Of a DNA stretch of 64,000 nucleotides, positions 50 to 16,481 are shown piece after piece. The stretch is from Phallusia mammillata (Eukaryota): contig OZ281494.1 of assembly GCA_965637545.1 (NCBI GenBank), positions 2,232,001 through 2,296,000 of the forward strand. The letters are read 5' to 3'. The notes below the pieces were generated by a model that was not told the DNA's origin, ran no database searches, and was given only the letters and a program-made list of their open reading frames with translations. How positions within the stretch are numbered: position 1 is the stretch's first letter; every line of letters starts with the position of its first letter. Both the position numbers and the translations under genes were made by a program.

Positions 50-1537
50 CCCAAGATTTGTTACACCCTCAAAACCCCGCTGGGCCGGCAAAAATCGTTG
101 CATCACGTTGCGCTTAATTGTGCTGGCGACAAGAAAACATGACCTGTTGTTGGCTCTCAAATTGGAACATAAACTAGATTTTGGCAGGTCCACTAGCAAA
201 ATAGAAACATGGTAATAGTGTTAGTGTTGCAGCTGCATAATACATTTAATAGGAAGCCATTGACTTCAACAAACCACCTTAACCGCAACTGAGTAAACCC
301 GCTTTCCCTCGCCGGTAGTTATTAATCATTACTGATCAGCTGTTGATGTTGAGACAGGATGTACGTGCAATAGCTGCTTTCTCTCATGTATCAAGCTAAG
401 GTATAAATAGTTAAAATTCTTTGGGCATACATGACTTTGATGCTGTTTAAAACACTTAGCAAGCAGCGTCACTAAAAAGTGTGCTGTCACTTACCTTCCT
501 ACTAATTCCCGGCGGCGGGCAAGTCCATATGCTAGTTTTTTTGCGCAGAAATTTATGTGATCTATGATACAATAAACGCATTTGATCTGGATTCAGGTCA
601 CATTATTCATACTTTAATTTTGTGCCGTCGCTTCTAAACCTTGCAAAATTGAAAAATAACTTTGCAAATTACTTTTGTTGACGTTTTCACACAACACAAG
701 CGTTTGCTGCCTTACCTCGGCATCTTTGCCACGAACATCAAGAACAATATTTTGTCTGGTACTCAGTTGTGCAGGAATGTAAAAAACAAACAAAAGAGTT
801 CTTTGTGACACAACGTATCTGCCAACTGTTCAATAACAGAAAATAAAACCGTATTGGAAGGGTGAACTATTTTGATTACTTGTCGCTTGGTTGCTCTACT
901 TTGGACTCTTATTAACAGCTTTCTTCTAATCGAGGCAGTTATTTGTGGAAACGCGATAAGAAGGCAGGATATTTGTGATGTCTCTTCCCAACTTTCTACC
1001 CGTATTTAGTGGGAAATTGCCGAATCTGTCATTCAGAGGTAAAACCGTGGTTGCTGTGATGTATAAAGAAAAATTCTGACCAAAAGCTTTAAACCTGTCT
1101 GCTAAACTAACAGTAGAGGAATATAATTGTGATTGTAAATGCGGTATTCAATCAGGAAAAGCCCATCTTCAAGACTAATATACTTTTTACGTGATCTAGA
1201 CAAAACTAGTGTTTTCTGAAAGAGCACACAAGACAGTTGGAAGTATAAGTAACTTGCGAACATACAGGAGCACTGATAAACCCGAGAAAAGATTAAACGC
1301 AAATTACGGGATTTTATCAGAGTTTTTCGACAAAAATCATTTCGTTGGCAATAATTGATCAATTAAACAACTTTACCTGCTATGTGTTGCAAATTGGTTA
1401 GAGTATTCTCCACAAGCTTGATTGATTTGACGGCAATAACATTTGGTCAGCGACTTCCTCCCGCTCGTGCCAAGCATTAGATGGTTTAGTATATTGTTGT
1501 GGCTCACAATCGGGACAGTTTGTAAAGTTTGTAAAGC
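50..1537. repeat. Inverted, diverged copy of the upstream spacer that precedes every LDLa-GPCR gene
   Basis: The reverse complement of 1440-1530 matches 23190-23300 and 16800-16900 (acaaactg..cccgat.gtgagccacaacaat.tactaaac.atctaatgcttggca). 280-400 matches 24090-24170 and 60-220 matches 24230-24390. Matched by eye. Confidence 0.8.
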
Positions 1538-2335
1538 GACTTCGGCTTTAACCATGACATTGATATCTGCTTATAGACTTGTATCTGTCTACAAACTATT
1601 TCTCACTATATTACTGGGGCCTAAATGGACTATTTTGGGGTGTTTTGTTACTTGGTGTGTTTCTTTGTTCATTGCCATTATTCCAATCCTTAATTTTTCC
1701 TCTGGTTAGTTTGTGACAACAATCTGGTTTCCTAATTTCGTTCACAAACGTGATTTTGTTTCTTTTGAAGCTGCAATGCTTTTGGCACAACAAATGTCAC
1801 CCACCAACAGCACCGTGTTATCATGACACGACGCTAAACGAGTCATCGACATCAACATGTCCGTGCAATTAATCAAAGGAGAGTTTGGTTACTACGCCAA
1901 AACCAGCGTGTGTTTGCCAAGACTGTTTTCTTCAAGTGGCAATTCAGCTTGGGGATACTCACTGTTTGTAATCACAGTAGATTTTGTCTTGTTTATTTTA
2001 TGGTTGTCGCTTATGTCCTCATTTATCGACGCAGCAATCGCATGGCTGAGGCAAGAAACAATGATACCAGTGCCAAAATGCAGAAACGAATATCCAGATT
2101 GCTTTTGACGGATTTTTGTTGCTGGATTCCGATTTGCATACTAAGTTATGTTTCGCTGGGTGGTGTAGTAATGTCAGATATCGTTTATGTGCTTGCAGCT
2201 GCGGTTTTGCTTCCGATCAACAGCGCCCTCAACCCGTTGCTTTATTCTTCTGTGATTGACAGCGCTTTGGAGAAATGTAAGAAAGCTGGTGTTGCTTCTG
2301 TGCGCCGGACGAATACCGAACTAGTTACTATGTAA
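1538..2335 (+). pseudogene. 5'-deleted LDLa-GPCR pseudogene (end of TM3 to C-terminus only)
   Basis: Reads TSALTMTLISAYRLVSVY...TDFCCWIPI...LPINSALNPLLYS...TELVTM*. In-frame stops at ~1707 (TAG) and ~1824 (TGG>TGA) and a frameshift near 1990. Fused directly to upstream spacer with no signal exon or ectodomain. Confidence 0.92.
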
Positions 2336-3159
2336 TCTTGTTTGCTCTATTTTTATGCGGAGAACCGTTGTTTTCGTGTATTTTGACAACAAAAAGATCT
2401 TCTGTACATAATAGGCCCATTATTTTAGGCGGATCGGAACAGTGGTATATATTAGTATCTCCCAACATTTAACAATCTATTTTTTTCTGCCTAATGCATT
2501 TTGTGTGTCTCTGATTTTTAATTTAGCGTAGGTTATGATCTTGCTCGCCGACATTTGCTTAGCTTTATTTTAATACATATCTAAATTCATAATAAACCAA
2601 AGAATGAATATATTTCCAAACAGACATGTGACAGAACCAGCTTATGATATTTGTTTTAAATACAAAACACCCCACTATTGCTATTGCCTTTTAAAACTTT
2701 CCACATTTAGATTTGGGCTTAACAGAAAGTGATGTGTTCTTTATGAAGTTTGTAAACGCAGTTGTGGGGAAAATTTGACATTGACAGTGATTTTTTGCAA
2801 CAAAATGTCAGAGAGATTAACAAAAACAATGCTTAGAATGAAAACAAAACTTCCAAACATCAGATACATATGAGGTTTGTCATAAAATGTTTAAATATTG
2901 TACATAAAGTTCAAATCATGAACTGACATTTAGATGCTTTTAAGCCTTTCAGTTTTCATAAACAGTCGGTTCCACTCCGGGACGAAAGTTGCTTGAAAAG
3001 TTGATGTAACTTGTTCGTTCGCCTTCCAGCTCATATAAGTGAGGTAAAGATATTGCTGGAACAATACGACTGAGTATTTTTATATCAGTTTGATAAATTA
3101 TTTTTATCTCTTATTTTGATGCAATACATTATACAAGACATAGCTTGTGTAAGTTCTTG

Positions 3160-6100
3160 TCAAGAGTACTTCGGTTTCCGCAATTTCGGGGCACTTTTAT
3201 TAGACTGGGCTACATAAGGTTTGCAACAGTTTAAATATTACATAAAGAAACATATTTGGAAAGTCATGGAACAAAATTGTGAAAACTATTCGAGTTGTAT
3301 GTTTTATTTCAGAATCGTTTTTTAATATGACTTAACCGGTAAACGACTTCGCTTACTTATACATTTATATTCAAGTTCGTAACTTTATCTACAAGACTAA
3401 GTCGTTTTATTTTCAAATGTAATGTTACACTTTTACTTTCCAAACATTACAACTTTTTCATGTGTTAATTTGTCAACTTAAATCAAGTCACCTGAAATGG
3501 TTTTTGGAAGCCCGGAAACCGTTCCATCTATTTCAACTGGTTGCTCTTTCGATCTGCCATAAATGTCGTTAAAAGACTGTTTTATTATTCGCACTACGTA
3601 GGTTGGTATAAAATGATAAACCAAAGAACAGTCGCTTGTTTTTGCCAACCTTTGTTTCGTGCAGCAGCAAACGAAAACAATCACCAGTAACGTCACAATC
3701 AAAATAAATCCTGCCGCACTTCCGGATATAATCCCAATTAAAGTTCCCATGGGAAGACTTCCTGCAAATGTACAACTGCATTAAACTTTTTTTCACATAT
3801 AATGAACTACTTTTTTATCATGTTGTTTAACTTCCATAGTAGACCTTACCTGATGAGCAATTGGCAGAGGAATTCGTTAACGTTGTGAAAACTATTTTGG
3901 AAGTTGCGTTTGTAGAAAAATTGCTGTTGAGTAAAACTGTTAACTGCAATCAAAACACAATATTGATTAAATATTTTAACAGCTGGAATCCACATTCTGT
4001 TAAAGAAACTAACGTAAAAGGTTTTAGGAAGGCAAAACTGCAAAATTACTGTAATGCAGGTTTAACTTAGCGTCAAGGTACTATGGACTAACAAAATACT
4101 CTTTGAAAACTCAAATTATAAAGTGAGTCTGGTTTATAGTGTTCTGAAAATTACTACTTTTTTAGTTTGTACCTGATAACTTCGCACAAATTGAAACATA
4201 TACCAGATGCAGCACACTACTTTCTTGCAACAAACCTCTGCGCTGTAGTTTGTGGAGGGTTGTAGATTTAGTATTCCGGCAGATTGTTCAGAGTACAGTG
4301 TTGTGATGCTTTTGTTGTGGGAAGTTTCAACTAAAACCTTAACAAATCACATAGGAAAATGTGAAAGAATAATTGATAAGAAAGTAGAAATAATTAATGA
4401 TAATTGATGAGAGTAATTAGCAGTGCTTCCTTAATCAGAATCTGTCAATAATAGTGTTAAACGAAACATGTGCTTGACCTTATGTAATCCGTTTACTAGC
4501 AAGCAATGTTTTTTCCCCAAAAACAGTTATAAATTGTAATATCATAAAAATACGGATAAAAATAAATTAAAACCAGAATTTTGACGCTTTGCAGAACGTA
4601 ATATTCTTTTAAAGTTACAAATAAAAACAAAACAATATTAGAATTAAATGTATGTCCTGTGAATAAAAAAAATAGATCAACTAGTGGATTTGCGTTTTTT
4701 TTTAAACACCACCTGTGGATTCAGAGAATGAATTCCGAGTAACTGATCCAGGCCAGACCAATGTATAGATGTCGTAGTTGGGTCGCATGGATTTGGCGTG
4801 GTCCAAGCTGTAACTGATAGTAAATAGCGCCAGTAACTCCACCGTGTCAGCACCGTAGTTTTCACAAACAAAAAAAAAAAGTAGAAAAGAAACAAAATTA
4901 ATTCCCACCTGAAAAGCAACTCGCAGGGAGATTCCCCAATGACGTAAACTGGATCGATGACGTAACGTTTCTAGGTGGACAGCTGTCAATCAACACCGTA
5001 ACCTGTTGGAATTAAAAACAAAGTCTAAGGAGCTTTCAGGAAACGTGCCACAATAAAGGAAGGAAGCAGTTGGCAACTTATAAACCTGAAACCGCTATGT
5101 AGGACTTAGTAGCACATGTTAAGGCGCTGCAGTGAAAATACAACTACATTTTCAGATCTTGGTTTCAGACACCCCACCTATGGTTGCTAAATTAAAGAAA
5201 AGAAGTTGCAATATTCAACTTTAAAATCAAAGTTCTACTCGATCCTTGCAAGGTTGTACTACTGTGCTAATTATACCCGGAAATAAAACACTGATTTTAG
5301 TCATCGCAAAGCCACAAACCTTTGCACTGTAGGTCACCAACGAAGTGAGGTTTAAAATATTGGCTTTGAGATCCGAATACTTTGCTTTGATGATTTGTCC
5401 GTGAGAAGTCTCTATCAAAACCTTAACAAAAACATGCTCAGCTGTGTCACATTAAATGCAATATTACGTGCTTTTACCTTCGGGTTTAGCGAGTATGCGT
5501 TGATGAGTTGAGAAAGACCAGACCACGTGATTGACGTCATGCTCGGATCACAATTGTACGACGTCACCTTTGTAGTAACTAGCTTATCAAAGAAAGAAAC
5601 CATTAGCATACAAATCTGTATGCAAATTGTAATTATGAAAACAAACTTGCTTTATACTATGAGTTTGTGGAGGAAGCAGTGGCTTACACGAAGTTTACTT
5701 AATTGAAATAAGGCCACATAAAAACTTGTCATATTTTGCAGAACATTGGGTGCAACCAGGAAGTCAAACCGGAACTGAACCTGGACCCATATGGCAAGCG
5801 GTTCGACTCTCTGGGTGCAGTATCACAAAACATACAAGTTTCGTATTTCAAAACGTCGTTGTAAAGCGTTTTGTGACTATGAGCTCAAACGAAAGTGTTC
5901 ATTTGTCGCATTGTGGGGAATCAATACTTTCGACGATGAATTCTAGAAATTAACCAACTGTGAAAACCTAGGCCCAAAACGAACTAAGCCCTGTCGGCTT
6001 GGCTGAATGTCGTATACATACTCACGTTTTATTTGGCAGACATAATTCGCGGCGTTTTCACTGCCAGTACAATTCCTGTTAGTTTGCTTCCAGCCATTCC

Positions 6101-8922
6101 CATAATGCAACGCTCTCTGTTGACACGTGGTCAAGTTAGTTGTCGGAAAATCAGCTGCTGACCCATCACTCCAAAACCATGCTTTCCGCGTTACGCTAAA
6201 CCGAGCTCCAACGAATACGGTTATATCTGTAACGGTAGTAAAATTTTCTTTGCACTTTATGATTAAAGAAAAATATACGAAATTTTTGATGACTGTACAA
6301 TGAATGATTTTGTAAAACACATGTGTTAGTAAGCCCAATGTAAATAATTGAATGCTTGACTTTTTAGTTTTACCCACCCATAACTAAAGTTAGCTACAAG
6401 TATGGTTGACCTACTACCCAGTTTTCAATTCGATACCAATAACAGATATTTTAAACAAAAAGTTCTTCGATCCGATCACAAATTATTAAATCATTTTTGT
6501 CAACAAATTCCTTGGAAAACATTTAAAGAATACTAGTCACTTTTAGACGTTGTGTGCAGGTTTACATTAACCATTTCGAAGCAGTGTGATGTCCGTTTGT
6601 AAATCACTATAGTGCTGGCCTAAACTTGACTTAATTGTGACCTCAGTGGAGGCTATGCTATATTTGACAAACGAATCGATTTACTTTCAGTTTTAAGCGT
6701 ACAATTTTATCTGCACGCTACCAAAACACCCAAAAACTTGATCGTCGTAATACTGGTGATTTTCGGCACGTCCTATGTTTTCTCAATAACGAAAAACAAA
6801 CGTTCTAACCAAGAGAATAAGTAGTGATGTACTGGCGACTAACAAAAAAGTCTGTACCAAGATTCTAGCAAAATATTGTGGCAGAAACGAGGGACCAACC
6901 CATGTTTTCCTCGTTGATATTGGCGTTTACGGCAACAGAGCCGAAGTATCGGAAGAGTACGGATACAGGGTATTGGGTATCGACGCCCGAATATCCTAAT
7001 ACACATTTTAGCAAGGAATATAGCTGAAAATCGTCTTTTAACCATAAGCATGCCTTACTGGGAACGTAGATCACTCCATCCTGTCGTTTATGCGGGTTTG
7101 CTGTGGTTTGTAGCGAGGAATAAATATCAAAACTTTGCTCGACGTTAATTGTCCTCCAAGTTTTTATGGGATTACGTGCAGCGTAAAGTGAAAACCTAAG
7201 TTTGAGTTCTACAACAAAAACAAATTGAAAGTGAAAGACAAAATGGTTTACACAAAAATGATCTATACAAAATTAATAATTATCTATATGTATCAAAGTC
7301 TTAGGCATTAGTTGTTTGAAAAGAACAATTTACGACAGGTATTTTTAATCACAAAATTTACAGAGAATCCAAGTTTGAAATAAACGATTCATGTTTTTCT
7401 ATGAACATGTTATCGTATCATTGACTTCGTATCAAGGTAAAAAGTGCCAAACTTCGAAATCGAGTTCTGAAACTTAACAAGTGCTCGGTCTTGCCTGGAT
7501 CTTTGGCATCCTCGCAATCTTTTTCAACGGTCACTTTCCATACAACAGAAGTGCCTTTTTGGCAAAAGCTAACTTTGACCAACCAACTTCCTATATCACT
7601 GCAAAAAAATGCAAATTTACTTTCAAGTGTTCTACTTATAGCAACACAACAAAAAAGGAAGCAAAAAACAGAAGGTAGCGTCGATAACGGGGACATCTAA
7701 CTATGGTCGCAAAAATCAAACTGTGTCATAACTTTGACATAAAAAAGTCTCTTTGTTGCTCACATCGTTTTGATTTAACACAATACTTTTTTTCAATTTT
7801 GGCCTTTACATTACAGTTTAATGTTGATCTCGAGACGTTAGGTATTATTTTTGGAGTTTGCCAAAAATGATAGACAAATATACTAAGGTAGTTACAACAA
7901 CCCATAAAGGCTTTGTGAAACGATGTCTTGCTTTAAAATTGGACAAATTATGTAACCATTACAAATTTCGTATTTCTATTTTCCATCGACATTGCGCAAA
8001 GGGTTTTATGTCTCAATTTCAGTTTCACCAAAATTATCGGCAGCATTGAAAGTGCTTGTATGTCTATAGATGACAATGAAAGAAAAAAGTTACGATAAAT
8101 ATCAAGAAAAACTGAACACTTCAAAATATTTTGTCACGAAAACGCTATAAAAGAGCAATACCTTCCTCGCCTGAGCTGCTGTTTTATTTAATGGTTTTGA
8201 TTCATAAAACGGACGCAAAAAATCTGCATTTAAGCAAGTATATCAACGTAAACACGTAATATCCGTACCCAACTTAATCATTGTTATAAATTAGCGAAAA
8301 TTAAAATACCAAACCTGTCAAAAAAGTCGAGATGCCATTTTGGTCGCGTGACGTTGTTTTTGATGAGCACTGAGTTTTTGTTAAAAGAAAACGCAGCAGT
8401 ACCAAACGGAAGATCGTGAATATAAAGTCTTTTCAAATCTAAATTATAGATATAACTTAACTAAAATGAAATTTTGTTAAAAATTACCAATCACAGCTGT
8501 AACCACTAACATAGAAGTTTGCATGTGCAATTGTCAAAAAATGATTCTTTTCATATGTCTGTACGAAAATATGTGGATAAACCTAAAAAAAATTCACGCT
8601 ACAAACTTTGTGTCGACAATTTCGTCAGCACGAATGTTAGAAACTGGGATGTTTGAGCATCTTTGAAATCAGCAAGTCGTCCACCCCGTGATAAGCATTC
8701 TTGTTCTGCTGTATTTGCATCAACAGTATATCTTGAAAATAAATAGACGACATCTTTCAAAGTCACCAGATTTTTGGGGCAATCTGCAAATGGCAGAAAC
8801 AATTCGCCCATGTATTATTTTCGGTCAAGAATTTACACAATGTTAGTAAATAACTTACTGGCAGTTTGGCTTCTGGCGTGGTAGAAGAGTAAAAACAGTA
8901 AAATAGTTTGAAATAGTTTCAT
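3160..8922 (-). CDS. Type I membrane protein: signal peptide, atypical C-type lectin-like domain, two FN3-like repeats, TM, short basic tail (~545 aa, 15 exons)
   Basis: Hand-built exons: 8859-8922, 8607-8783, 8315-8438, 7495-7598, 7059-7208, 6026-6226, 5478-5578, 5320-5421, 4909-5002, 4713-4813, 4236-4337, 3850-3943, 3650-3761, 3492-3553, 3160-3209. All phases match; total 1638 nt = 546 codons. Signal MKLFQTILLFLLFYHARSQTA; CTL motifs AEQECLSRGGRLADF, FVGARF..WFWSDGS, ANYVCQ; FN3-like ILNLQPSTNYSAELTV and ILNLTSLVTYSAKVTV; TM IISGSAAGFILIVTLLVIVFVCCC. One donor is GC. Confidence 0.8.
6710..6999 (+). pseudogene. Possible decayed type II membrane FkbM-like methyltransferase fragment, antisense in an intron
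   Basis: Hydrophobic NLIVVILVIFGTSYVFSI (~6735-6790), then after a frameshift 6811-6999 reads ...HVFLVDIGVYGNRAEVSEEYGYRVLGIDARIS*, resembling a SAM-binding motif I region. Family call from motif memory only. Confidence 0.3.
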
Positions 8923-10586
8923 GGCAAGAATCAGTTCAAGACAAAAAAATAATCTTTTACATCAAAAAACATAGTTTAGTATTAAAAGCAAATTGTGATG
9001 GGTAAATTTTTTGTAATATACTGTTGTAACAAACGACACTTTTACAGGAAAGCAAGCATATTCCGACAGGCTGACATATTTTAGCTTTAGCACACCTGGT
9101 AAATTAACTCAGCTCAAATTATATGCAATGTACATTAGATTCGCCTTCAAGAAATGGCTATTGATTTTACCCTAAGATGTAGATGAAAACAAATACACTG
9201 CCTTATCGGAATACATGTGTTCTTAACTATCACTAAGCAATAAAACTGTAAAGACGTCATACATCTTGTTTGCTTTTTTAATTCCCTACAAACGAGTCAG
9301 ATATTAGCATAACATTAGATGTTTTATTTGCTTTCAAAACGTTAAGATTAACTGCAGCAGTCTTGTTACGATTTTAATAACCAATGCCAAAAAACAACAA
9401 AAACTTAGCCTTACTTATCCGTCCTCTAAAATGTACTACATGTTTTCTCATGCTACGTGATAATTAGATGCTTATTACTTCCCGTGACGAAGTCTTAGAT
9501 ATCGCTTTGTTGTGCGTCATGCTTGAAAGTTCTTGCAAGACAAGAGATATGCAAATTACTTGTTCGTGCACCTTCTCATAGACTGATCACTCAACCACGG
9601 TCTGGTAGATGCGTTTATGTTATCAAACAAGCAGTGTGCTGTGTGTGATGAAACAGATGCAAGTTTTTTGAGATTGACAAAAAATTAGGGAAATAATAGC
9701 TGGTCTCATCAAGGTAGATCACCAAATACAAAACCTTTTTTCAAACAAACAGGGGATATAAAAGAGAAAAATTATTTTGGTTCGAAAGGCTGCACAATTG
9801 CGTCACTTAGTGTTTTGACTTTCCCGCACATACCCTGTGTTTAGTACTAATTAGGCCCTGTAATTGTGACTTATTTTTTATGGTTGTCTTTTAGGTTATT
9901 AAGAATGCTACTTGTTGCAGGTATGTAACCCTGTATTCGTTGCTTTAAGTCTTAGATCTATATTCCTGGACTGAGGTAAAAATGAAACATCAATCAATCG
10001 TTTGTTTGTCGCGTTTACAAGAAGAGAAGTAACACACAAAAAAGAAAGTTGTGTGACAAGTTTTAAAACGCCGAGTGTTTAATCGGCACTAACGGTGTGT
10101 TCTAAGAAACTGCAGGTGTGCTGTTACCGGGGTAATCGATGTGTATTCGCTTAACAACTTGCCACATAGGACGCACAACACGTTAGGTGTGTTGATTTAA
10201 GTCTAGGTGATCCGTTGTAAGTCTAACAGAAATACGAAAGGTTTTGTGGTGGCGCCATCTGACTCATCTAAAGCCACACACCCCTTCGTGTTGCAACTGC
10301 CTTAGTGTTGTTGTCTAGAAATATTTTTTTTAACCAACAAAAAATATCCCAACCTATCGAGATTGAAAATAAACTGCAACGTAGAAAAAAAATGAAGAAA
10401 AGAAACGTATAAAAGCAAAAAAAAGTGTGCAAAAATGAAACTTTTTTGTGTCAAAGTTTCTACCCAGCTAGATTTTTGCAACCATAAGTAGATGTTCTCG
10501 TTATGGACGAGACACTTTGTTTGTTTCTTACTCCTTTGTCGTTTTGCTATGAATGCAACACTATAGAAAGTTTGCTTTGTTTGCAG

Positions 10587-11553
10587 TGATACAGAGCGTT
10601 GGATGGTGAAAGTCTCGTTATGTCAGAAAGGCACTTCTTTGGTGTGGAAAGTGACCGTTGAAAAAGATTGCGACAACACAACAGATCCAGGCATGCTTTT
10701 TTGTACTTTGAAACCAAGTTTATTAACTTGGTTTTGAAATTTAGCAGCTTTTACCGCGACGCGAAATCAACGATACCATAACATGTATGTGGAAAAAACT
10801 TGCACCAATATTGGGTTATTATCTCAAATATCTTTTTTCTTATGCTGTAAATTATCTTTAAATTGTTATGTTTAAAAAATAATTAGGGAAGCAATAATTT
10901 GAAGAACTACACATCGATCATTTTTGTGTAAAACATTCTGTCTTTCACTTTCATTTTGTTGTAGAACTCAAACTTAGGTTTTCACTTTACGCCGCACGTA
11001 ATCCCATAAAAACTTGGAGGACAATTAACGTTGAGCAAAGTTTTGATATTTATTCGTCGCTACAAACCACAACAAACCCGCATAAACGACAGGATGGAAC
11101 TTTCTCTGTTCCCGGTAAGCAAGGATTTTACATATCTTTTTGACTTTGCTAAAAATTGTATTAGAAATTTGGAACGCATTGGGAATAATTTTGAGCCTAC
11201 AAATCCCAAACAGCTGCGTGATGTAGTCTGGCGAATCTAAACATTGCCATTCGTATAACAGGCTTCACTGATGAAAACTCGTAGGCCAAAAAGAGTGTGC
11301 TACTTGTATCTAGGGTTGGCCCGATCATACTTTGTCGATATCCGCATGAAAAGAAGGTTACATGTATATTTATTGGTACATAAAATAAGGAAAATGCAAA
11401 GAAACTAACTTTAATACAATTACAGATATCAACTTATTTGTTGGAGCTCGATTTATTGAGGCACGCAAAGCATGGTTTTGGAGTGATGGGTCAGCAGCTA
11501 ATTTTCCTACAAACAACTTGACCACGTGTCAACAGAGAGCGTTGAACTATGGG
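10587..11553 (+). pseudogene. Inverted, internally deleted paralogue of the CTL/FN3 gene (exons 4-6 only)
   Basis: Exons 10587-10690 (DTERWMVKVSLCQKGTSLVWKVTVEKDC), 10965-11114 (ELKLRFSLYAARNPIKTW...) and 11426-~11553 (INLFVGARF..WFWSDGSAANFP..TTCQQRAL) mirror 7495-7598, 7059-7208 and 6026-6226. The sequence then jumps to the inverse of ~3460. A terminal-exon relic at ~11860-11910 has lost its acceptor AG. Confidence 0.8.
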
Positions 11554-12199
11554 TCTGATAGATTAACACATGAATAAGTTGTATTGAATTATGCAAAAGT
11601 GTAACATTACATTTGAAAATAAAACGACTTAGTCTTGTAGATAAAGTTACGAACTTGAATATAAATGTATAAGTAAGCGAAGTCGTTTACCAGTTGAGTG
11701 AGATTGAAAAAGGATTCTGAAATAAAACATACAACTCGAAAAGTTAATTATAATTTTGTTCCATGACTTTCCAAATGTATTTCTCGAATTAATAAAATGT
11801 AAATTGTTACTGTCAATGAATATGCAAACCTTATTTAACGCTTTTGACAGTTCAATTTTTGCCCAGTCTATCAAATTGTGCTCCGAAATTGTAAAACTAA
11901 AGTACATTTGACAAAAACCTATACAACCTATGCTCTTTATAATGGCATTAAATCAAGAGATATAATTAATTCATAAAATTGAGATAAAAACTACTCAATC
12001 GTATTGTTTCATCAATCATTTTACCTCACTTATATGAGTTGGAAGGCGAACGAACAAGTTGTGTCAACTTTTCAAGCAACTTTCGTCCAGGAGTGGAACC
12101 GACTGTTTATGAATACTGACATGCTTAAAAGCATCTAAATGCTGGTCTATTATTTGATCTTTATGTACAATATTTAAAATTTATGACAAACCTCATATG

Positions 12200-12663
12200 C
12201 ATAGGCGCCGAGTTTTGCAAAAATGCAAGGTGGCGGACTTGAAATATGACGTCATTTTATGTGACGTCACTAATGCGTGCACCACATGAGCTCAAACTCA
12301 AAGCCCAACAAACTTCCTATAGGATGCAACGTTTGTCAAAATCATAAAAAAGAAATTTTTGAAATAGTATTTATTCGGAACACTTTGCTGTGTAACGTTT
12401 ATCATTGGTTTAGCAGCGTTTTAAAAAATGTTTGTCATGTTGTTTTTGCTTTATATCACCTACAATAACCATTTATTACAGCACAATCGAATTTTACACA
12501 ATAATGGCCATACATTCACTGTCAACAATTGTGTGTTTGACCTCATAAACAAGGCACTAATCGAAACAGGTTCGTACGATACCGCTACAAACAAACCAAA
12601 ATATCCACGGTGGCCGCCACTGTGCTTTACAAACCCAAGGTGGCGGCCTACTCGGCGTCTATG
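12200..12663. mobile_element. hAT-type MITE (family 1)
   Basis: TIRs CATAGGCGCCGAG / CTCGGCGTCTATG, perfect 8-bp TSD CTCATATG. Empty site with a single CTCATATG in the inverted paralogous arm at ~2865-2875. Confidence 0.9.
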
Positions 12664-13197
12664 CTCATATGTAACTGATATTTGGAAGTTTTGTTTTCAT
12701 TCTAAGCATTGTTTTTGTTAATCTCTCTGACATTTTGTTGCAAAAAATCACTGTCAATGTTTCTTTTGTCTAATTTGCCACAAAACTGCGTTCACAAACA
12801 TCAAACCAACTTCTACTTAAGCATAAATCTCAATAAGGAAAGCTCAAAAAGGCAATAGCAATAGTCGGGTACAATGTATTTAAAACAAATATCAAAAGCT
12901 ACTTCTGTCACGTGTCTGCTTAGAAATGTATTAATCTTTCGATTTATTATGAGTGAGATATGCATCAAAAAGAAACAAGAATATCGGCGAACAAGATCAT
13001 CTATGCCAATTTACAAACGAAAGATACTTATAATGCACAATGCAGAAAGAAAATAGTATGTTAAATGTTGGGGGATTGTAATATATACCACTGTACCGAT
13101 CCGCATAAAACAATGGGCCTATTATGTGCGGAATATCTTTTTGTTGTCAAAATACACAAAAAACAACGGTCTCCGCATAAAAGTAAAGCAAACGAGA

Positions 13198-16100
13198 TTA
13201 CATAGTAACGAGTTCGGTATTCGTCCGGCGCACAGAAGCAACACCAGCTTTCTTACATTTCTCCAAAGCGCGGTCAATCACAGATGAATAAAGCAACGGG
13301 TTGAGGGCGCTGTTGATTGGAAGCAAAACCGCAGCTGCAAGCACATATACGATGTCCGACAAAACTACACCACCAAGCGACAAAAAACTAAGCATGCAAA
13401 TTGGAATCCAACAACAGAAATCGGTCAGAAGCAATCTAGATATTCGTTTTTGCATTTTGGCGCTCGTATCATTGCTTTTTGCCTCGGTCATGCGATTGCT
13501 GCGACGATAAATAAGAATATAAGCGACTACCATGAAAATAAACATGACAAAATCGACTGTGATGATAAACAGTGAGTATCCCCAAGCTGCATGGCTTTCT
13601 GAAGCAAAGAGCCTTGGCAAACACACGCTGGTTTTGGCGTAGTAACCAAACTCTCCCTTGATGGATTGCCCTGACATGTTAATGTCGATGACTTGTTTAG
13701 CGTCGTGCCATGATAACACGGTGCTGTTGGTGGGTGACATACGTTGTGCCAAAAGCATTGCAGCCTCAAAAGAAACAAAATCACGTTTGTGAACGAAATT
13801 GGGAAACCAGATTGTTGTTACAAAGTAACCAGATGCAAAATCAATTGTGGGAACGATGGCAATGACCAAAGCAACACACCAAGTAACGAAACACCCCAAT
13901 ATAATCCATTTAGGTCCCAGTGACATAGTAAAGAATGGGTTCCACACAGACACCAGTCGGTAGACTGATATCAGTGCCATGGTTAAAGCCGAAGTTTGAG
14001 ATGAAACAACACACAGTGCACCTAGGATTGAACATTGTGTGCTTGAACGCCATTCTGAATCAAAATAACAATAACTCCCGGAGAACTGGACACTTTTGAC
14101 TGCAACAGCAAGTAAATAGATTCCCATTAACATGTCGGAAACTGATAGGTTAACAATGAATATTTGAGTGCTTTTATTTACACGATTGTCGGTATTCCAG
14201 TTTAGATATGTCTTTTTTAGAGTGGTTGCCGCCACTATGAAATTCCCAATCAATGCAAGGATACCCATAAACCATATAAACGCGTTCAAAATCGGGTTGG
14301 CAATCATTTCCTTCTGATTGGAGAAGACAGTGTTACGAGAGCTGACATGTGGACATTCGTCACTGCCGTCTGAGCAGTCTTTGATTCCGTCTTCTTTGTC
14401 AGCAATGGGCACTGATAGCGGATTCCCAGTAAGACAATAAAACCTCGTGTCTTTACAACGATCCTTTGCCTCATCCGATTTATCGTCACAATCGTAGTTT
14501 CCATCGCAAACTTTCATGACGTCAATGCTCGACAAATCTCCATTTTTACAAATATAGCGTTTGGGACAAAGTGATTCGTTGTAGGAGTTGCCTGGAGTTC
14601 CATCACATGCCCAGTATTGTGCTGCATCTGACATAAATTTGGTGTCATTGCAGAATGTTGGTGGATATTGGCAATTATGGCACTCATCAGTAGCACTTAA
14701 ACATTCAGGTCTTCCATCGCATGCTACACCTAATGTATCCCTTTTGGCGCATATTATAGCATCAATTTGTGGATAACAATAGTTCGTGTTTAGCCAGTCC
14801 AAGCAGACCACAGATTGGTTGCACAGCACAGAATCTATCGGAAGGCAATCTGTTTGGTTGTAGCAGTGCATATGACCTGGTGGACAAGTTGACTGAGAAT
14901 CGCCAAGCACAGCTTTGCACACCGTCTGATTCTCGCATAAGCATTCATCTGACAGGTCGTAGCAATCAATCACGCCGTCGCACACCTGATTCTTTGAGAT
15001 AACGAGTCTCTTGTCCAGGCAAAGGAAGCATCGGAATTCTCCGTTGACGAAACACAGATCAGATTTGTCAGCGCACTGGGCGTCTTGATCGTAGAGATTG
15101 ATTTGTGGCAAGCTGCATGGAAATGTTAACCAATATCCAAGACATTTGAAACTCGGTTTCGCATGATTGTGGTAGCCACTTGGTGTTATAAATGGACAAA
15201 AAGAAACCAACGCGATTTGATAGTTATTGTTAAGGTCTTGATAAAAGACAGGTGATGATAAAGGAGGCCTGTCCTGTGGTCGGCATTGGGGACTGTTGCA
15301 AATCCAGTAATTATCAGTACATACTTTATCTTTGTGTCTTTCACACGGTCTGTGATGCTGAATACAACGTGAAGATTTGTTTACTTGGTACTTCAAATAT
15401 CTCTCCAACGATTTTTTACTGGTGCAGTTAACAAAAAACTGTGTGCAGCTTAAACCAAAAGTATTTATATAAAAATCGCAAGGTTCATCGGTTTGATCCA
15501 TGCAGTTCGGTGTACCATCGGCCACTGTTGTGTTAGGTATGCATTGCCCAGTAGTCGGACAGATCTGATCACCATAGATGCATCCGCACATTACTTGATC
15601 ACCACTGTATGTGCAATTGGTTTCGTCGCTGCTGTCATCGCAGTCAAACTTCCCGTTGCATTTTAAAGATAAAGAGATGCACTGTTTAGACTTGCACTCA
15701 AATTGATCTTCCCAGCAAGGACAGTTGGCTTCATCGCTGTAATCTTTGCAATCATCTACCCTGTCACATACGTTCGAGCTTGGCAGACACCCACGCACAC
15801 CAACACATGCAGAAATCTCGTAACATGCGCATTGAAACTCATTAACTGGGCAAGTGCAATTAATTTCGTCTGTTCCGTCCAAACAGTTGTAGATGCCATC
15901 ACATATTTGTGTCTTTTCATAACATCCCAACCCATCCGTGCAATTACTGTCTCTTGGAAAACAACCGCATTGGTATTGGTTTGCATTGCAAGTCGCAGTT
16001 ACATTATTGTCTTCGCATCTCCCGACTGGCGCACACTGAGTTGCATTAAATGTAGTTGAAATGTTGTCAGGTATTGTTGCTGGGCAACCACACACGAACT

Positions 16101-16481
16101 CTCCGTAGTAGCAAGTTTGCAACCAATGCCGACATTCCTCTGTAAAAACAGTTTGGCACTTAACAGTCATGGGGGTGCAAAAAACTTAAACCAGTTATTT
16201 TTTTTAAAGGGAGTCGTTAACTACACTTCTAATAAACGAACAAGTAAACCGTAGTGGTGTAAAATTGAACTGCAATAAACAAAATCATATTTCGTTTGGT
16301 AAAAATCTGTTACACCTGCTGTGTTGCGTTTTATGACCATACCGTATCATACTCACCGTCCTGTATTTCTTAAAAGTTTAACAGGAACAATCAAAATTTA
16401 CTTACCATAAGTGACAAGCCCGTCCGATGGAAAGTTGTTGATCAACAGAACAAAAGATAACAATAGCACAATCCTTACCAT
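13198..16481 (-). CDS. LDLa-repeat class A GPCR without LRRs, type A (1005 aa, 2 exons)
   Basis: Exon 1 16406-16481 (MVRIVLLLSFVLLINNFPSDGLVTY, donor gtaagt). Exon 2 13198-16139 (acceptor ttttacag, phase 1). About 8-11 canonical or degenerate LDLa modules (e.g. CWEDQFECKSKQC...CNGKFDCDDSSDETNC). RXFP/GRL101-like 7TM (NLSVSDMLMGIYL, TDFCCWIP, LPINSALNPLLY). Confidence 0.93.

What the first reader, a model, noticed from the sequence alone, without database searches (positions are those of the whole stretch)
6026..8783. C-type lectin domain split by an in-frame three-exon, 126-aa cassette
Seen: exon 8607-8783 encodes the first half of a CTL fold (C...AEQECLSRGGRLADF...) and exon 6026-6226 the second half (FVGARF..WFWSDGS..C..C..YVC). 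Both boundaries are phase 1, so joining them directly gives a contiguous CTL. Between them lie three spliceable exons (124+104+150 = 378 nt, frame-preserving) encoding an unrecognised beta-rich sequence with one Cys pair. Established: canonical sugar-binding CTLs carry EPN/QPD and WND motifs, which are absent here. Inference: either a large domain insertion into a lectin fold, or an alternatively spliced cassette switching the receptor between two ligand-binding forms.
Basis: partly seen in the sequence, partly recalled or inferred. Interest (0 to 1): 0.7.

Follow-up and report, generated by a model that had tools for sequence, protein, structure and literature searches.

The report
Lectin-like domain split by nested module
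This sea-squirt receptor gene really does have a lectin-like domain cut in two by three extra exons, but they are a permanent built-in module shared by more than 100 sister genes, and nothing found shows them acting as a splicing switch.

Summary
On the minus strand, exon 8783-8607 and exon 6226-6026 encode the two halves of a compact C-type-lectin-like domain. Exons 8438-8315, 7598-7495 (GC donor) and 7208-7059 lie between them with the stated phases.

They are not a peculiarity of this gene. This genome has at least 120 paralogs of both halves. All 21 distinct paralogs examined, plus three very divergent ones, carry the same three pieces in the same order, strand and phases. Those pieces are under purifying selection (dN/dS 0.31-0.45).

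Two annotated Clavelina lepadiformis proteins, a 592-aa receptor and a 1090-aa receptor tyrosine phosphatase, contain the insert inside their coding sequence. Their flanking intron phases match.

So the insert is an old, apparently constitutive nested module of about 126-146 residues with its own cysteine pair. It probably entered a phase-1 intron by exon shuffling.

I found no evidence for exon skipping, but no RNA data cover this gene. Two structure predictions failed, so the fold is unknown. The only leads are a sub-threshold similarity to Pfam DUF7023 and related un-nested modules in a CUB gene.

This scan had already found the same architecture on other DNA of this genome (s1-394850, s1-355933).

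The parts
8859..8922 (-). Exon 1: start codon and signal peptide (21 codons plus 1 nt, phase 1 donor GTAAGT)
   Evidence: Read from the sequence. Hydrophobic leader; the split codon with exon 2 gives Asn.
8607..8783 (-). Exon 2: N-terminal half of the C-type-lectin-like domain (beta1, alpha1, alpha2), holding Cys C1
   Evidence: Weak Lectin_C match at profile positions 5-36. The family profile's only PDB hits are CTLDs: CD93, codakine, SP-D, collectin-11. 125 paralogous copies in the genome.
8315..8438 (-). Exon 3: first third of the nested module (DLxRxYI ... WHLxFFD)
   Evidence: Collinear homologues in every paralog. Shuffle test 1 of 2000.
7495..7598 (-). Exon 4: middle of the nested module with the invariant Cys...Trp.Val...Cys; GC donor at 7494-7493
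   Evidence: The GC donor is shared with the inverted copy. The paralogs' GT donors have the same phase. Shuffle test 1 of 2000.
7059..7208 (-). Exon 5: last part of the nested module (LRFSLY ... NVEQSF ... DG..VP)
   Evidence: 93% identical to the inverted copy against 48-58% in the flanking introns. Shuffle test 3 of 2000.
6026..6226 (-). Exon 6: C-terminal half of the lectin-like domain (beta2 'VGAR', WFWSDGS, Cys C2, C3, C4)
   Evidence: 122 paralogous copies. The family profile's only PDB hits are Dectin-1, KLRG1 and CD94, starting at the WIGL strand. The profile finds Clavelina proteins P0014 and P0016.
3478..5578 (-). Downstream exons, approximate model. Two repeated exon pairs of 101+106 nt (5578-5478/5421-5316 and 4813-4713/4337-4232), a 94-nt exon (3943-3850) and the transmembrane/tail exon ending at stop 3480-3478. 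This makes a type I membrane protein of roughly 535-541 aa.
   Evidence: Read from sequence and open frames. No Pfam family reaches threshold. The acceptor of the last exon is not resolved (3775 or 3757). No transcript evidence.
10289..11559 (+). Decayed inverted copy of the same gene. It keeps exon 4 (10588-10689), exon 5 (10967-11113) and the first two thirds of exon 6 (11428-11559). Exons 1-3 and everything after mid-exon 6 are missing.

Best explanation
The window holds one divergent but apparently intact member of a large ascidian family of type I membrane receptors. Its N-terminal C-type-lectin-like domain carries a nested module of about 126 residues. The module is cysteine-bonded and probably all-beta, and it sits in the loop between helix alpha2 and strand beta2.

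Shown:
- The three insert exons are homologous to insert exons present in every family member examined.
- They are under purifying selection.
- They are part of the annotated coding sequence in another genus.
- The flanking intron positions and phases are conserved.

Inferred:
- The two lectin halves fold together around the module. Lectin Cys C1 lies in exon 2 and its canonical partner C4 in exon 6, while the module has its own Cys pair.
- The module entered a phase-1 intron of an ordinary lectin gene by exon shuffling before the two ascidian lineages split.
- It is included constitutively.
- Functionally, the head is a composite, non-sugar, calcium-independent recognition surface of a cell-surface receptor. 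The module is the more divergent part, and signalling goes through the short tyrosine-bearing tail, or through a phosphatase domain in the RPTP members.
For: - Family size: 122 and 125 genomic matches to the two halves.
- A complete collinear chain e2-e3-e4-e5-e6 in all 31 sampled loci (21 distinct), with conserved donor phases. The same holds in the three most divergent members, including the RPTP type.
- Pooled dN/dS is 0.37, 0.45 and 0.31 for the insert exons.
- The window's own insert exons match the family exon HMMs at p of about 0.0005-0.0015 each and share the invariant C, W, V, C of exon 4.
- Clavelina lepadiformis proteins P0014 (CAK8679940.1 / XP_076817574.1) and P0016 (XP_076817985.1, with two Y_phosphatase domains) contain the insert between the halves. 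This genome is not Clavelina (45-50% identity).
- In the Clavelina gene the introns e2|e3 (phase 1), e3|e4 (phase 2) and e5|e6 (phase 1) are at the same places. The e4|e5 intron is absent there.
- All PDB hits of both half-profiles are CTLDs, at complementary positions.
Against: - No transcript of the window gene was seen, so its expression and splicing are unproven.
- The lectin assignment of each half is below Pfam's threshold and PDB E-values are only about 0.2.
- Both structure predictions failed (pLDDT 30 and 44), so neither the single-domain folding of the two halves nor the module's fold is shown.
- Exon 4 has a GC donor, which could weaken its inclusion.
- The window's insert is only 16-37% identical to that of the main family.
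Confidence: 0.78

Rival explanations
1. Regulated cassette: exons 3-5 (or exon 5 alone, which is 1-1 symmetric) are alternatively skipped, giving a plain lectin head in some tissues or stages and a module-bearing head in others.
For: - Skipping all three exons, or exon 5 alone, keeps the frame.
- Exon 4 has a non-canonical GC donor.
- The 60 nt of intron upstream of exon 5 are 82% conserved between the two inverted copies, against 51% for the rest of that intron. This pattern is sometimes seen beside regulated exons.
Against: - No RNA evidence either way.
- The Clavelina RefSeq isoforms X1 and X2 both include the insert.
- Purifying selection on the insert in all paralogs.
- Frame preservation follows automatically from insertion into a phase-1 intron.
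- The conserved intron flank can equally be a short gene-conversion tract covering exon 5.
Confidence: 0.1
2. The two flanking pieces are not halves of one lectin domain. The unit of about 260 residues is a different, unrecognised fold that merely carries lectin-like motifs at its ends.
For: - Pfam Lectin_C does not reach threshold on either half, nor on whole P0014.
- AlphaFold2 gave no confident fold.
Against: - Every PDB hit of both half-profiles is a CTLD, at collinear and complementary positions.
- The canonical CTLD cysteine positions, the WIGL-like strand and WxWSDGS are all present.
- UniRef names P0014 'C-type lectin domain-containing protein'.
- P0003, a family second-half ORF, hits Lectin_C positions 40-106 at E 0.0066.
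Confidence: 0.07
3. In this particular divergent copy the insert exons are relics that are no longer used, or the whole gene is a young pseudogene, even though the family's insert is functional.
For: - GC donor at exon 4.
- The gene sits in an inverted duplication whose other arm is clearly decayed.
- No expression seen.
- The insert is very divergent from the main family.
Against: - All 126 insert codons and every other exon are open, although divergence from the paralogs is saturated. About 9 stop codons would be expected in random sequence of this composition.
- The hallmark residues are kept.
- Over the first 134 nt of exon 5 the two arms differ at only 4 sites, of which 3 are synonymous by my reading of the codons.
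- The GC donor predates the duplication and has the strong AG|GCAAG context.
Confidence: 0.05

Closest known systems
Clavelina lepadiformis LOC143463089 (XP_076817574.1 / CAK8679940.1, 592 aa) and LOC143463404 (XP_076817985.1, 1090-aa receptor tyrosine phosphatase); uncharacterised
   Same: Same head: lectin first half, module of about 125 aa with the same hallmark residues, lectin second half, then beta-type repeats and a transmembrane segment. The flanking intron positions and phases are the same.
   Different: Only about 45-50% identical in the second half and less in the module. The module is encoded by two exons there and three here. One of the two carries tandem phosphatase domains instead of a short tail.
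Compact, non-calcium C-type lectin-like domains of the NK-receptor/Dectin-1 kind (Dectin-1, CLEC9A, KLRG1, CD94) and the CD93 CTLD
   Same: These are the best, and essentially the only, structural relatives by sequence of the two halves. They share the WIGL-like strand, WxWxDGS and the C1-C4 and C2-C3 cysteine positions, and they lack EPN/QPD and WND motifs.
   Different: From my own knowledge, none of them has a 126-146-residue domain between alpha2 and beta2. The matches are sub-threshold (E about 0.2). Those are type II or differently built receptors; this one is type I with the lectin head at the N-terminus.
Pfam DUF7023 (PF22894), and the free-standing modules of a multi-CUB gene at G000:C1:11.155-11.159 Mb
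   Same: The insert of P0014 and P0016 and the CUB-gene modules all hit the same part of DUF7023 (profile positions about 25-127). They share W, F.L(Y), C, C, F.LY and RL at aligned positions.
   Different: All scores (17-21 bits) are below the family's 27-bit cut-off. In the CUB gene the module is contiguous in one exon and follows a complete DUF7495 domain instead of being nested. What DUF7023 is remains unknown to me, and no paper mentions it.
Exon shuffling of 1-1 symmetric modules into phase-1 introns (general mechanism for extracellular domains; from established knowledge)
   Same: The module is bounded by phase-1 introns on both sides, so the host frame is preserved with or without it.
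   Different: Classical shuffling places modules between domains. Here the module landed inside a domain and was kept.

Membership tests
C-type lectin-like domain (CTLD; Pfam PF00059 Lectin_C) | Sequence match to the family profile above the curated cut-off (22.6 bits) | tested here: inconclusive
   Tested exon by exon only. Exon 2 scores 14.1 bits on profile positions 5-36. Exon 6 gives no hit. The related ORF P0003 scores 17.6 bits on positions 40-106. Whole P0014 gives no hit, because the insert splits the domain.
C-type lectin-like domain (CTLD; Pfam PF00059 Lectin_C) | Four canonical cysteines (C1 in alpha1, C2 at beta3, C3 after beta4, C4 in beta5), plus the WIGL-type beta2 strand and the WxWxDGS motif | tested here: met
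   C1 lies in exon 2 (..QEC..). Exon 6 has VGAR, WFWSDGS and three cysteines at the expected spacing. All are invariant or nearly so across 20 family members.
C-type lectin-like domain (CTLD; Pfam PF00059 Lectin_C) | Double-loop alpha/beta fold | tested here: inconclusive
   AlphaFold2 on P0014:25-285 with a 3-row alignment gave mean pLDDT 29.9. The PDB sequence hits of both halves are CTLDs only, but at E about 0.2.
Calcium-dependent sugar-binding C-type lectins (CRD sensu stricto) | EPN or QPD tripeptide and WND motif in the long-loop region | tested here: not met
   Both are absent from exon 6 of the window gene and from all 19 paralogs aligned. The stretch between WSDGS and C2 is only 11 residues.
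Ascidian split-lectin receptor family (unnamed; P0014/P0016 and at least 120 genes in this genome) | Collinear chain of lectin N-half, three-part module and lectin C-half with intron phases 1, 2, 1, 1 | tested here: met
   Window gene. Paralogs. Clavelina: (without the e4|e5 intron).
Ascidian split-lectin receptor family (unnamed; P0014/P0016 and at least 120 genes in this genome) | Module hallmark residues (DLxRxY, HL..FD, C..W.V..C, LR.SL, DG...P) | tested here: met
   Alignments. HMM scores of the window's exons beat 1997-1999 of 2000 shuffles.
Pfam DUF7023 (PF22894) | Profile match above the 27-bit cut-off | tested here: not met
   17.3 bits (P0014), 18.8 bits (P0016), 21.1 bits (CUB-gene module). 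The window's own exons give no hit.
Alternatively spliced cassette exons | Both inclusion and skipping junctions present in transcripts | not testable with these tools
   The only runs holding the locus are DNA. The RNA-guess runs of the species show nothing at this gene. In the Clavelina homologue only inclusion is annotated.

The most novel reading that the evidence does not exclude
The nested module is the specificity-determining element of an ascidian-wide receptor superfamily of more than 120 genes in this genome, including receptor tyrosine phosphatases. A lectin scaffold kept uniform by gene conversion presents a faster-diverging inserted domain. This would be a new way of building a diversified recognition repertoire, for example for self/non-self, gamete or settlement cues. 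In the window gene, skipping the weakly spliced GC-donor exon would add a second layer of variation.
Probability: 0.15. Interest if true: 0.75.

Novelty: new variant of a known kind. Interest (0 to 1): 0.5.

Why it matters
C-type lectin-like domains are among the best studied animal recognition folds. To my knowledge, a conserved 126-146-residue domain nested inside one has not been described. It is kept across ascidian genera and expanded to more than 100 genes, including receptor phosphatases.

It is a clean natural case of exon shuffling into, rather than between, domains. It also defines an unstudied receptor family in the closest invertebrate relatives of vertebrates.

For this window the practical message is more modest. 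The gene is one divergent family member, and the 'cassette' is ordinary constitutive coding sequence of that family.

Tried and rejected
- **RNA evidence.** The one run search found only two DNA holders. Laying X2 plus three RNA-guess runs gave even DNA coverage, and the only 'joints' are cross-mapping contigs of the inverted copy. No transcript was seen.
- **Word-indexed protein searches.** A search with the exon 5 ORF and one with a paralog's exon5+exon6 ORF found nothing, because of the length window. A search with P0014 found only itself.
- **Pfam and PDB sequence searches of the insert exons.** No credible hit.
- **ESM Atlas look-alikes of the P0014 insert.** TM at most 0.36, meaningless.
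- **A 98-row alignment of exon fragments to P0014, meant to deepen the AlphaFold input.** MAFFT stacked non-homologous fragments on one another, so I discarded it.
- **AlphaFold2.** The whole head gave pLDDT 30 (3 rows) and the insert alone pLDDT 44 (5 rows). Both are too poor for a fold search, so none was run.
- **A metagenomic contig carrying the closest second-half ORF (P0001).** No recognisable insert exons in the 1.4 kb available upstream.
- **Chance open frames in an intron.** Rejected.
- **Two tandem ordinary lectin domains.** Rejected: no further half-domain lies in the interval.
- **Literature.** No paper on a split lectin in tunicates or on DUF7023.
- **Left out as instructed.** Every search or fold of a joined, spliced model of the window gene or its paralogs.
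Full report
**1. The observation**

The gene lies on the minus strand. These are its exons:

| Exon | Coordinates | Content |
|---|---|---|
| 1 | 8922-8859 | Signal peptide; ends in phase 1 |
| 2 | 8783-8607 | 58 full codons: a first cysteine, then ..ANTAEQEC..GGRLA.., i.e. strand beta1 and helices alpha1-alpha2 of a C-type-lectin-like domain (CTLD) |
| 6 | 6226-6026 | The VGAR strand, WFWSDGS and three cysteines ending in YVCQIK |
| 3 | 8438-8315 | 124 nt, first insert exon |
| 4 | 7598-7495 | 104 nt, second insert exon |
| 5 | 7208-7059 | 150 nt, third insert exon |

- The three insert exons are open in the required frames with phases 1>2, 2>1 and 1>1.
- The insert has exactly two cysteines, both in exon 4.
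- EPN/QPD and WND motifs are absent.

**2. The local inverted copy**

A decayed inverted copy of the gene lies on the + strand at about 10289-11559.

- In the pairwise alignment, exon 5 is 93% identical (97% over its first 134 nt) and exon 4 is 79% identical. Neither has an indel.
- The introns are 48-73% identical and have many indels.
- Both splice-site dinucleotides of exon 5 and the GC donor of exon 4 are shared.
- The copy lacks exons 1-3 and everything after mid-exon 6.

**3. The decisive result: a gene family**

- Searching the window's own assembly with the two lectin halves gave 122 and 125 matches. Most lie on contig C1 at 0.5-1.8 Mb, with others on C4, C8 and at C1:16.3-16.8 Mb. The two halves are always 1-1.7 kb apart.
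- Open-frame listings of eight paralogs showed three conserved coding pieces between the halves.
- I built HMMs from paralog sequence only. In all 31 sampled loci that contain both halves (21 distinct genes) there is a complete collinear chain e2-e3-e4-e5-e6 on one strand.
- Donor sites with the same phases as in the window gene are available at each exon end.
- The three most divergent members I could find have the chain too. They are at C8:3.08 Mb, the phosphatase-type genes at C1:16.4 Mb, and C1:3.49 Mb.
- Alignments show that the window gene shares the family's hallmark residues. In exon 3 these are DLxRxY and HL..FD. In exon 4 they are the invariant C, W, V, C. In exon 5 they are LR.SL, N.E.SF and DG...P.
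- Its identity to the main clade is 16-37% in the insert, against 33-44% in exon 2 and 48-59% in exon 6.
- In a shuffle test, the window's exons 3, 4 and 5 were reached or beaten by only 1, 1 and 3 of 2000 composition-preserving shuffles against the matching HMMs.

**4. Selection**

Pooled Nei-Gojobori estimates over 18 distinct paralogs:

| Exon | dN/dS | dS |
|---|---|---|
| e2 | 0.41 | 0.19 |
| e3 | 0.37 | 0.55 |
| e4 | 0.45 | 0.97 |
| e5 | 0.31 | 0.98 |
| e6 | 0.24 | 0.35 |

The insert exons are therefore translated sequence under constraint. Their greater divergence goes with much higher synonymous divergence. This points to homogenisation (gene conversion) of the lectin exons rather than to diversifying selection on the insert. 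An earlier agent of this scan reached the same conclusion on another window (s1-394850).

**5. Other species**

- An exhaustive profile search with the exon 6 alignment found 36 proteins. Two are full-length. P0014 is 592 aa, from Clavelina lepadiformis (CAK8679940.1; RefSeq XP_076817574.1 is 92% identical over the head). P0016 is 1090 aa (XP_076817985.1).
- Both have the order lectin N-half, about 125 aa of insert with the same hallmark residues, then lectin C-half.
- P0016 continues into a transmembrane segment and two tyrosine-phosphatase domains (Y_phosphatase E 1e-104).
- The window's genome is not Clavelina: the best identity to P0014 is 45-50%.
- RefSeq isoform X2 (P0038) is an N-terminal truncation starting at Met77. 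It is not a skip of the insert.
- In the Clavelina gene (L061) the introns e2|e3 (phase 1), e3|e4 (phase 2) and e5|e6 (phase 1) are at the homologous codons. Exons e4 and e5 form one exon there.
- The nested arrangement therefore predates the split of the two lineages.

**6. Is it a lectin domain?**

- Half by half, Pfam stays below threshold. Exon 2 scores 14.1 bits on Lectin_C positions 5-36 and exon 6 scores nothing.
- A related second-half ORF (P0003) hits Lectin_C positions 40-106 at E 0.0066.
- Profile searches of the PDB return CTLDs only. The second half finds Dectin-1, KLRG1 and CD94, starting at the WIGL strand. The first half finds CD93, codakine, SP-D and collectin-11 at alpha1.
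- With P0014, three of the four distinct molecules hit are CTLDs (CLEC9A and Dectin-1). The top-ranked hit is an antibody Fab heavy chain at a similar, non-significant E-value, which I take as chance. The C-terminal half aligns to Dectin-1 residues 63-129. The N-terminal half aligns to residues 7-48 of the same chain, but only at 0 bits, so that part carries no weight.
- All these E-values are about 0.2. The case therefore rests on consistency plus the canonical cysteine and motif pattern.
- The canonical partner cysteines C1 and C4 lie in exons 2 and 6 respectively. This is the main reason to think the halves fold together.
- I did not test the joined two-half sequence or any spliced model in a search or fold tool.

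**7. What is the insert?**

- No Pfam or PDB sequence hit is credible for the exon profiles.
- Whole P0014 and P0016 both give sub-threshold hits to Pfam DUF7023 over the insert (E 0.004 and 0.001; profile positions 25-112 and 45-111).
- Searching the genome with that family picked up the exon 5 region of the phosphatase-type genes. It also picked up a 223-codon open frame at C1:11.157 Mb.
- That frame and a second one 1.8 kb upstream belong to a multi-CUB gene. In it, a module with the same hallmark residues is contiguous in one exon. In the upstream copy, the module follows a complete DUF7495 domain (E 9.5e-10) and precedes a CUB domain.
- Supporting scores: P0014 insert against this module gives BLASTP E 3e-4 over 68 collinear residues. 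hhalign of the exon 5 profile gives E 4e-4. A five-row alignment keeps W, F.L, C, C, F.LY and RL.
- I take this as a lead that the insert is an autonomous domain type that also exists un-nested. It is not proof.
- AlphaFold2 failed on the whole head (pLDDT 29.9). On the insert alone it gave pLDDT 44.2 and pTM 0.43, with only beta strands predicted. The ESM Atlas model is also poor. The fold remains unknown.

**8. Mechanism proposed**

A 1-1 symmetric module was inserted into a phase-1 intron at the alpha2/beta2 boundary of a compact, calcium-independent CTLD gene.

The product is a type I receptor with these parts in order:
- a signal peptide;
- a composite lectin-plus-module head;
- two repeated beta-type units, each encoded by a 101+106-nt exon pair;
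- a 94-nt exon;
- a transmembrane segment and a short tail with tyrosine motifs (this part of the model is approximate and has no Pfam support).

Inferred, not shown: constitutive inclusion, a protein rather than sugar ligand, and the module forming part of the binding surface.

**9. Rivals**

- A regulated cassette remains possible (about 0.1). The points for it are the GC donor, in-frame skipping, and the conserved 60 nt upstream of exon 5.
- A non-lectin fold is about 0.07.
- Relic exons in this particular copy are about 0.05.
- Chance open frames and two tandem lectin domains are excluded.

**10. Novelty**

I found no paper on this architecture. The proteins exist in databases only as uncharacterised models. 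The same architecture was already reported by this scan on two other stretches of this genome.

- the divergent window copy;
- the cross-genus intron comparison;
- the isoform check;
- the DUF7023/CUB-gene lead.

Noticed in passing
window 5664-5860 (intron 6 of the lectin-receptor gene): Dispersed high-copy repeat. Summed word depth is about 60,900 against about 250 elsewhere in DNA run X2, and two RNA-guess runs have short matches at 5772-5814. The + strand at 5800-5820 looks like a tRNA T-arm and 3' end, but ARAGORN and Rfam find nothing. It may be a tRNA-derived SINE.
   Followed up: partly
window 50-16481: Inverted duplication of a lectin-receptor/LDLa-GPCR gene pair with reciprocal decay. 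The lectin gene is intact on the left arm and broken on the right. The GPCR is one 995-codon open frame on the right arm (13201-16185, minus strand) and only fragmented frames on the left (about 1440-2332). This agrees with note s1-399144.
   Followed up: partly
G000:C1:11155000-11159500 (L050, L056, L057): Multi-CUB gene in which a DUF7495 domain (E 9.5e-10) is followed by a module related to the lectin insert. There are two such units, each contiguous within long open frames. DUF7495 itself has TW..A...C and WIYVG motifs that look lectin-like by eye.
   Followed up: partly
window 3481-3660 (cytoplasmic tail): The tail contains LVYHFI, which fits the ITIM consensus (S/I/V/L)xYxx(I/V/L) by eye. 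The Clavelina homologue's tail has YENx and YQNT motifs, and other family members carry phosphatase domains. Together these hint at phosphotyrosine signalling.
   Followed up: no
L061:7041-7304 (Clavelina lepadiformis homologue): Exons 4 and 5 of the insert are a single exon in Clavelina, so the phase-1 intron inside the module was either gained in the window's lineage or lost in Clavelina.
   Followed up: yes
Family-wide (loci L007-L045): Synonymous divergence is three to five times lower in the lectin exons (dS 0.19 and 0.35) than in insert exons 4 and 5 (0.97 and 0.98). This suggests exon-limited gene conversion among paralogs.
   Followed up: partly
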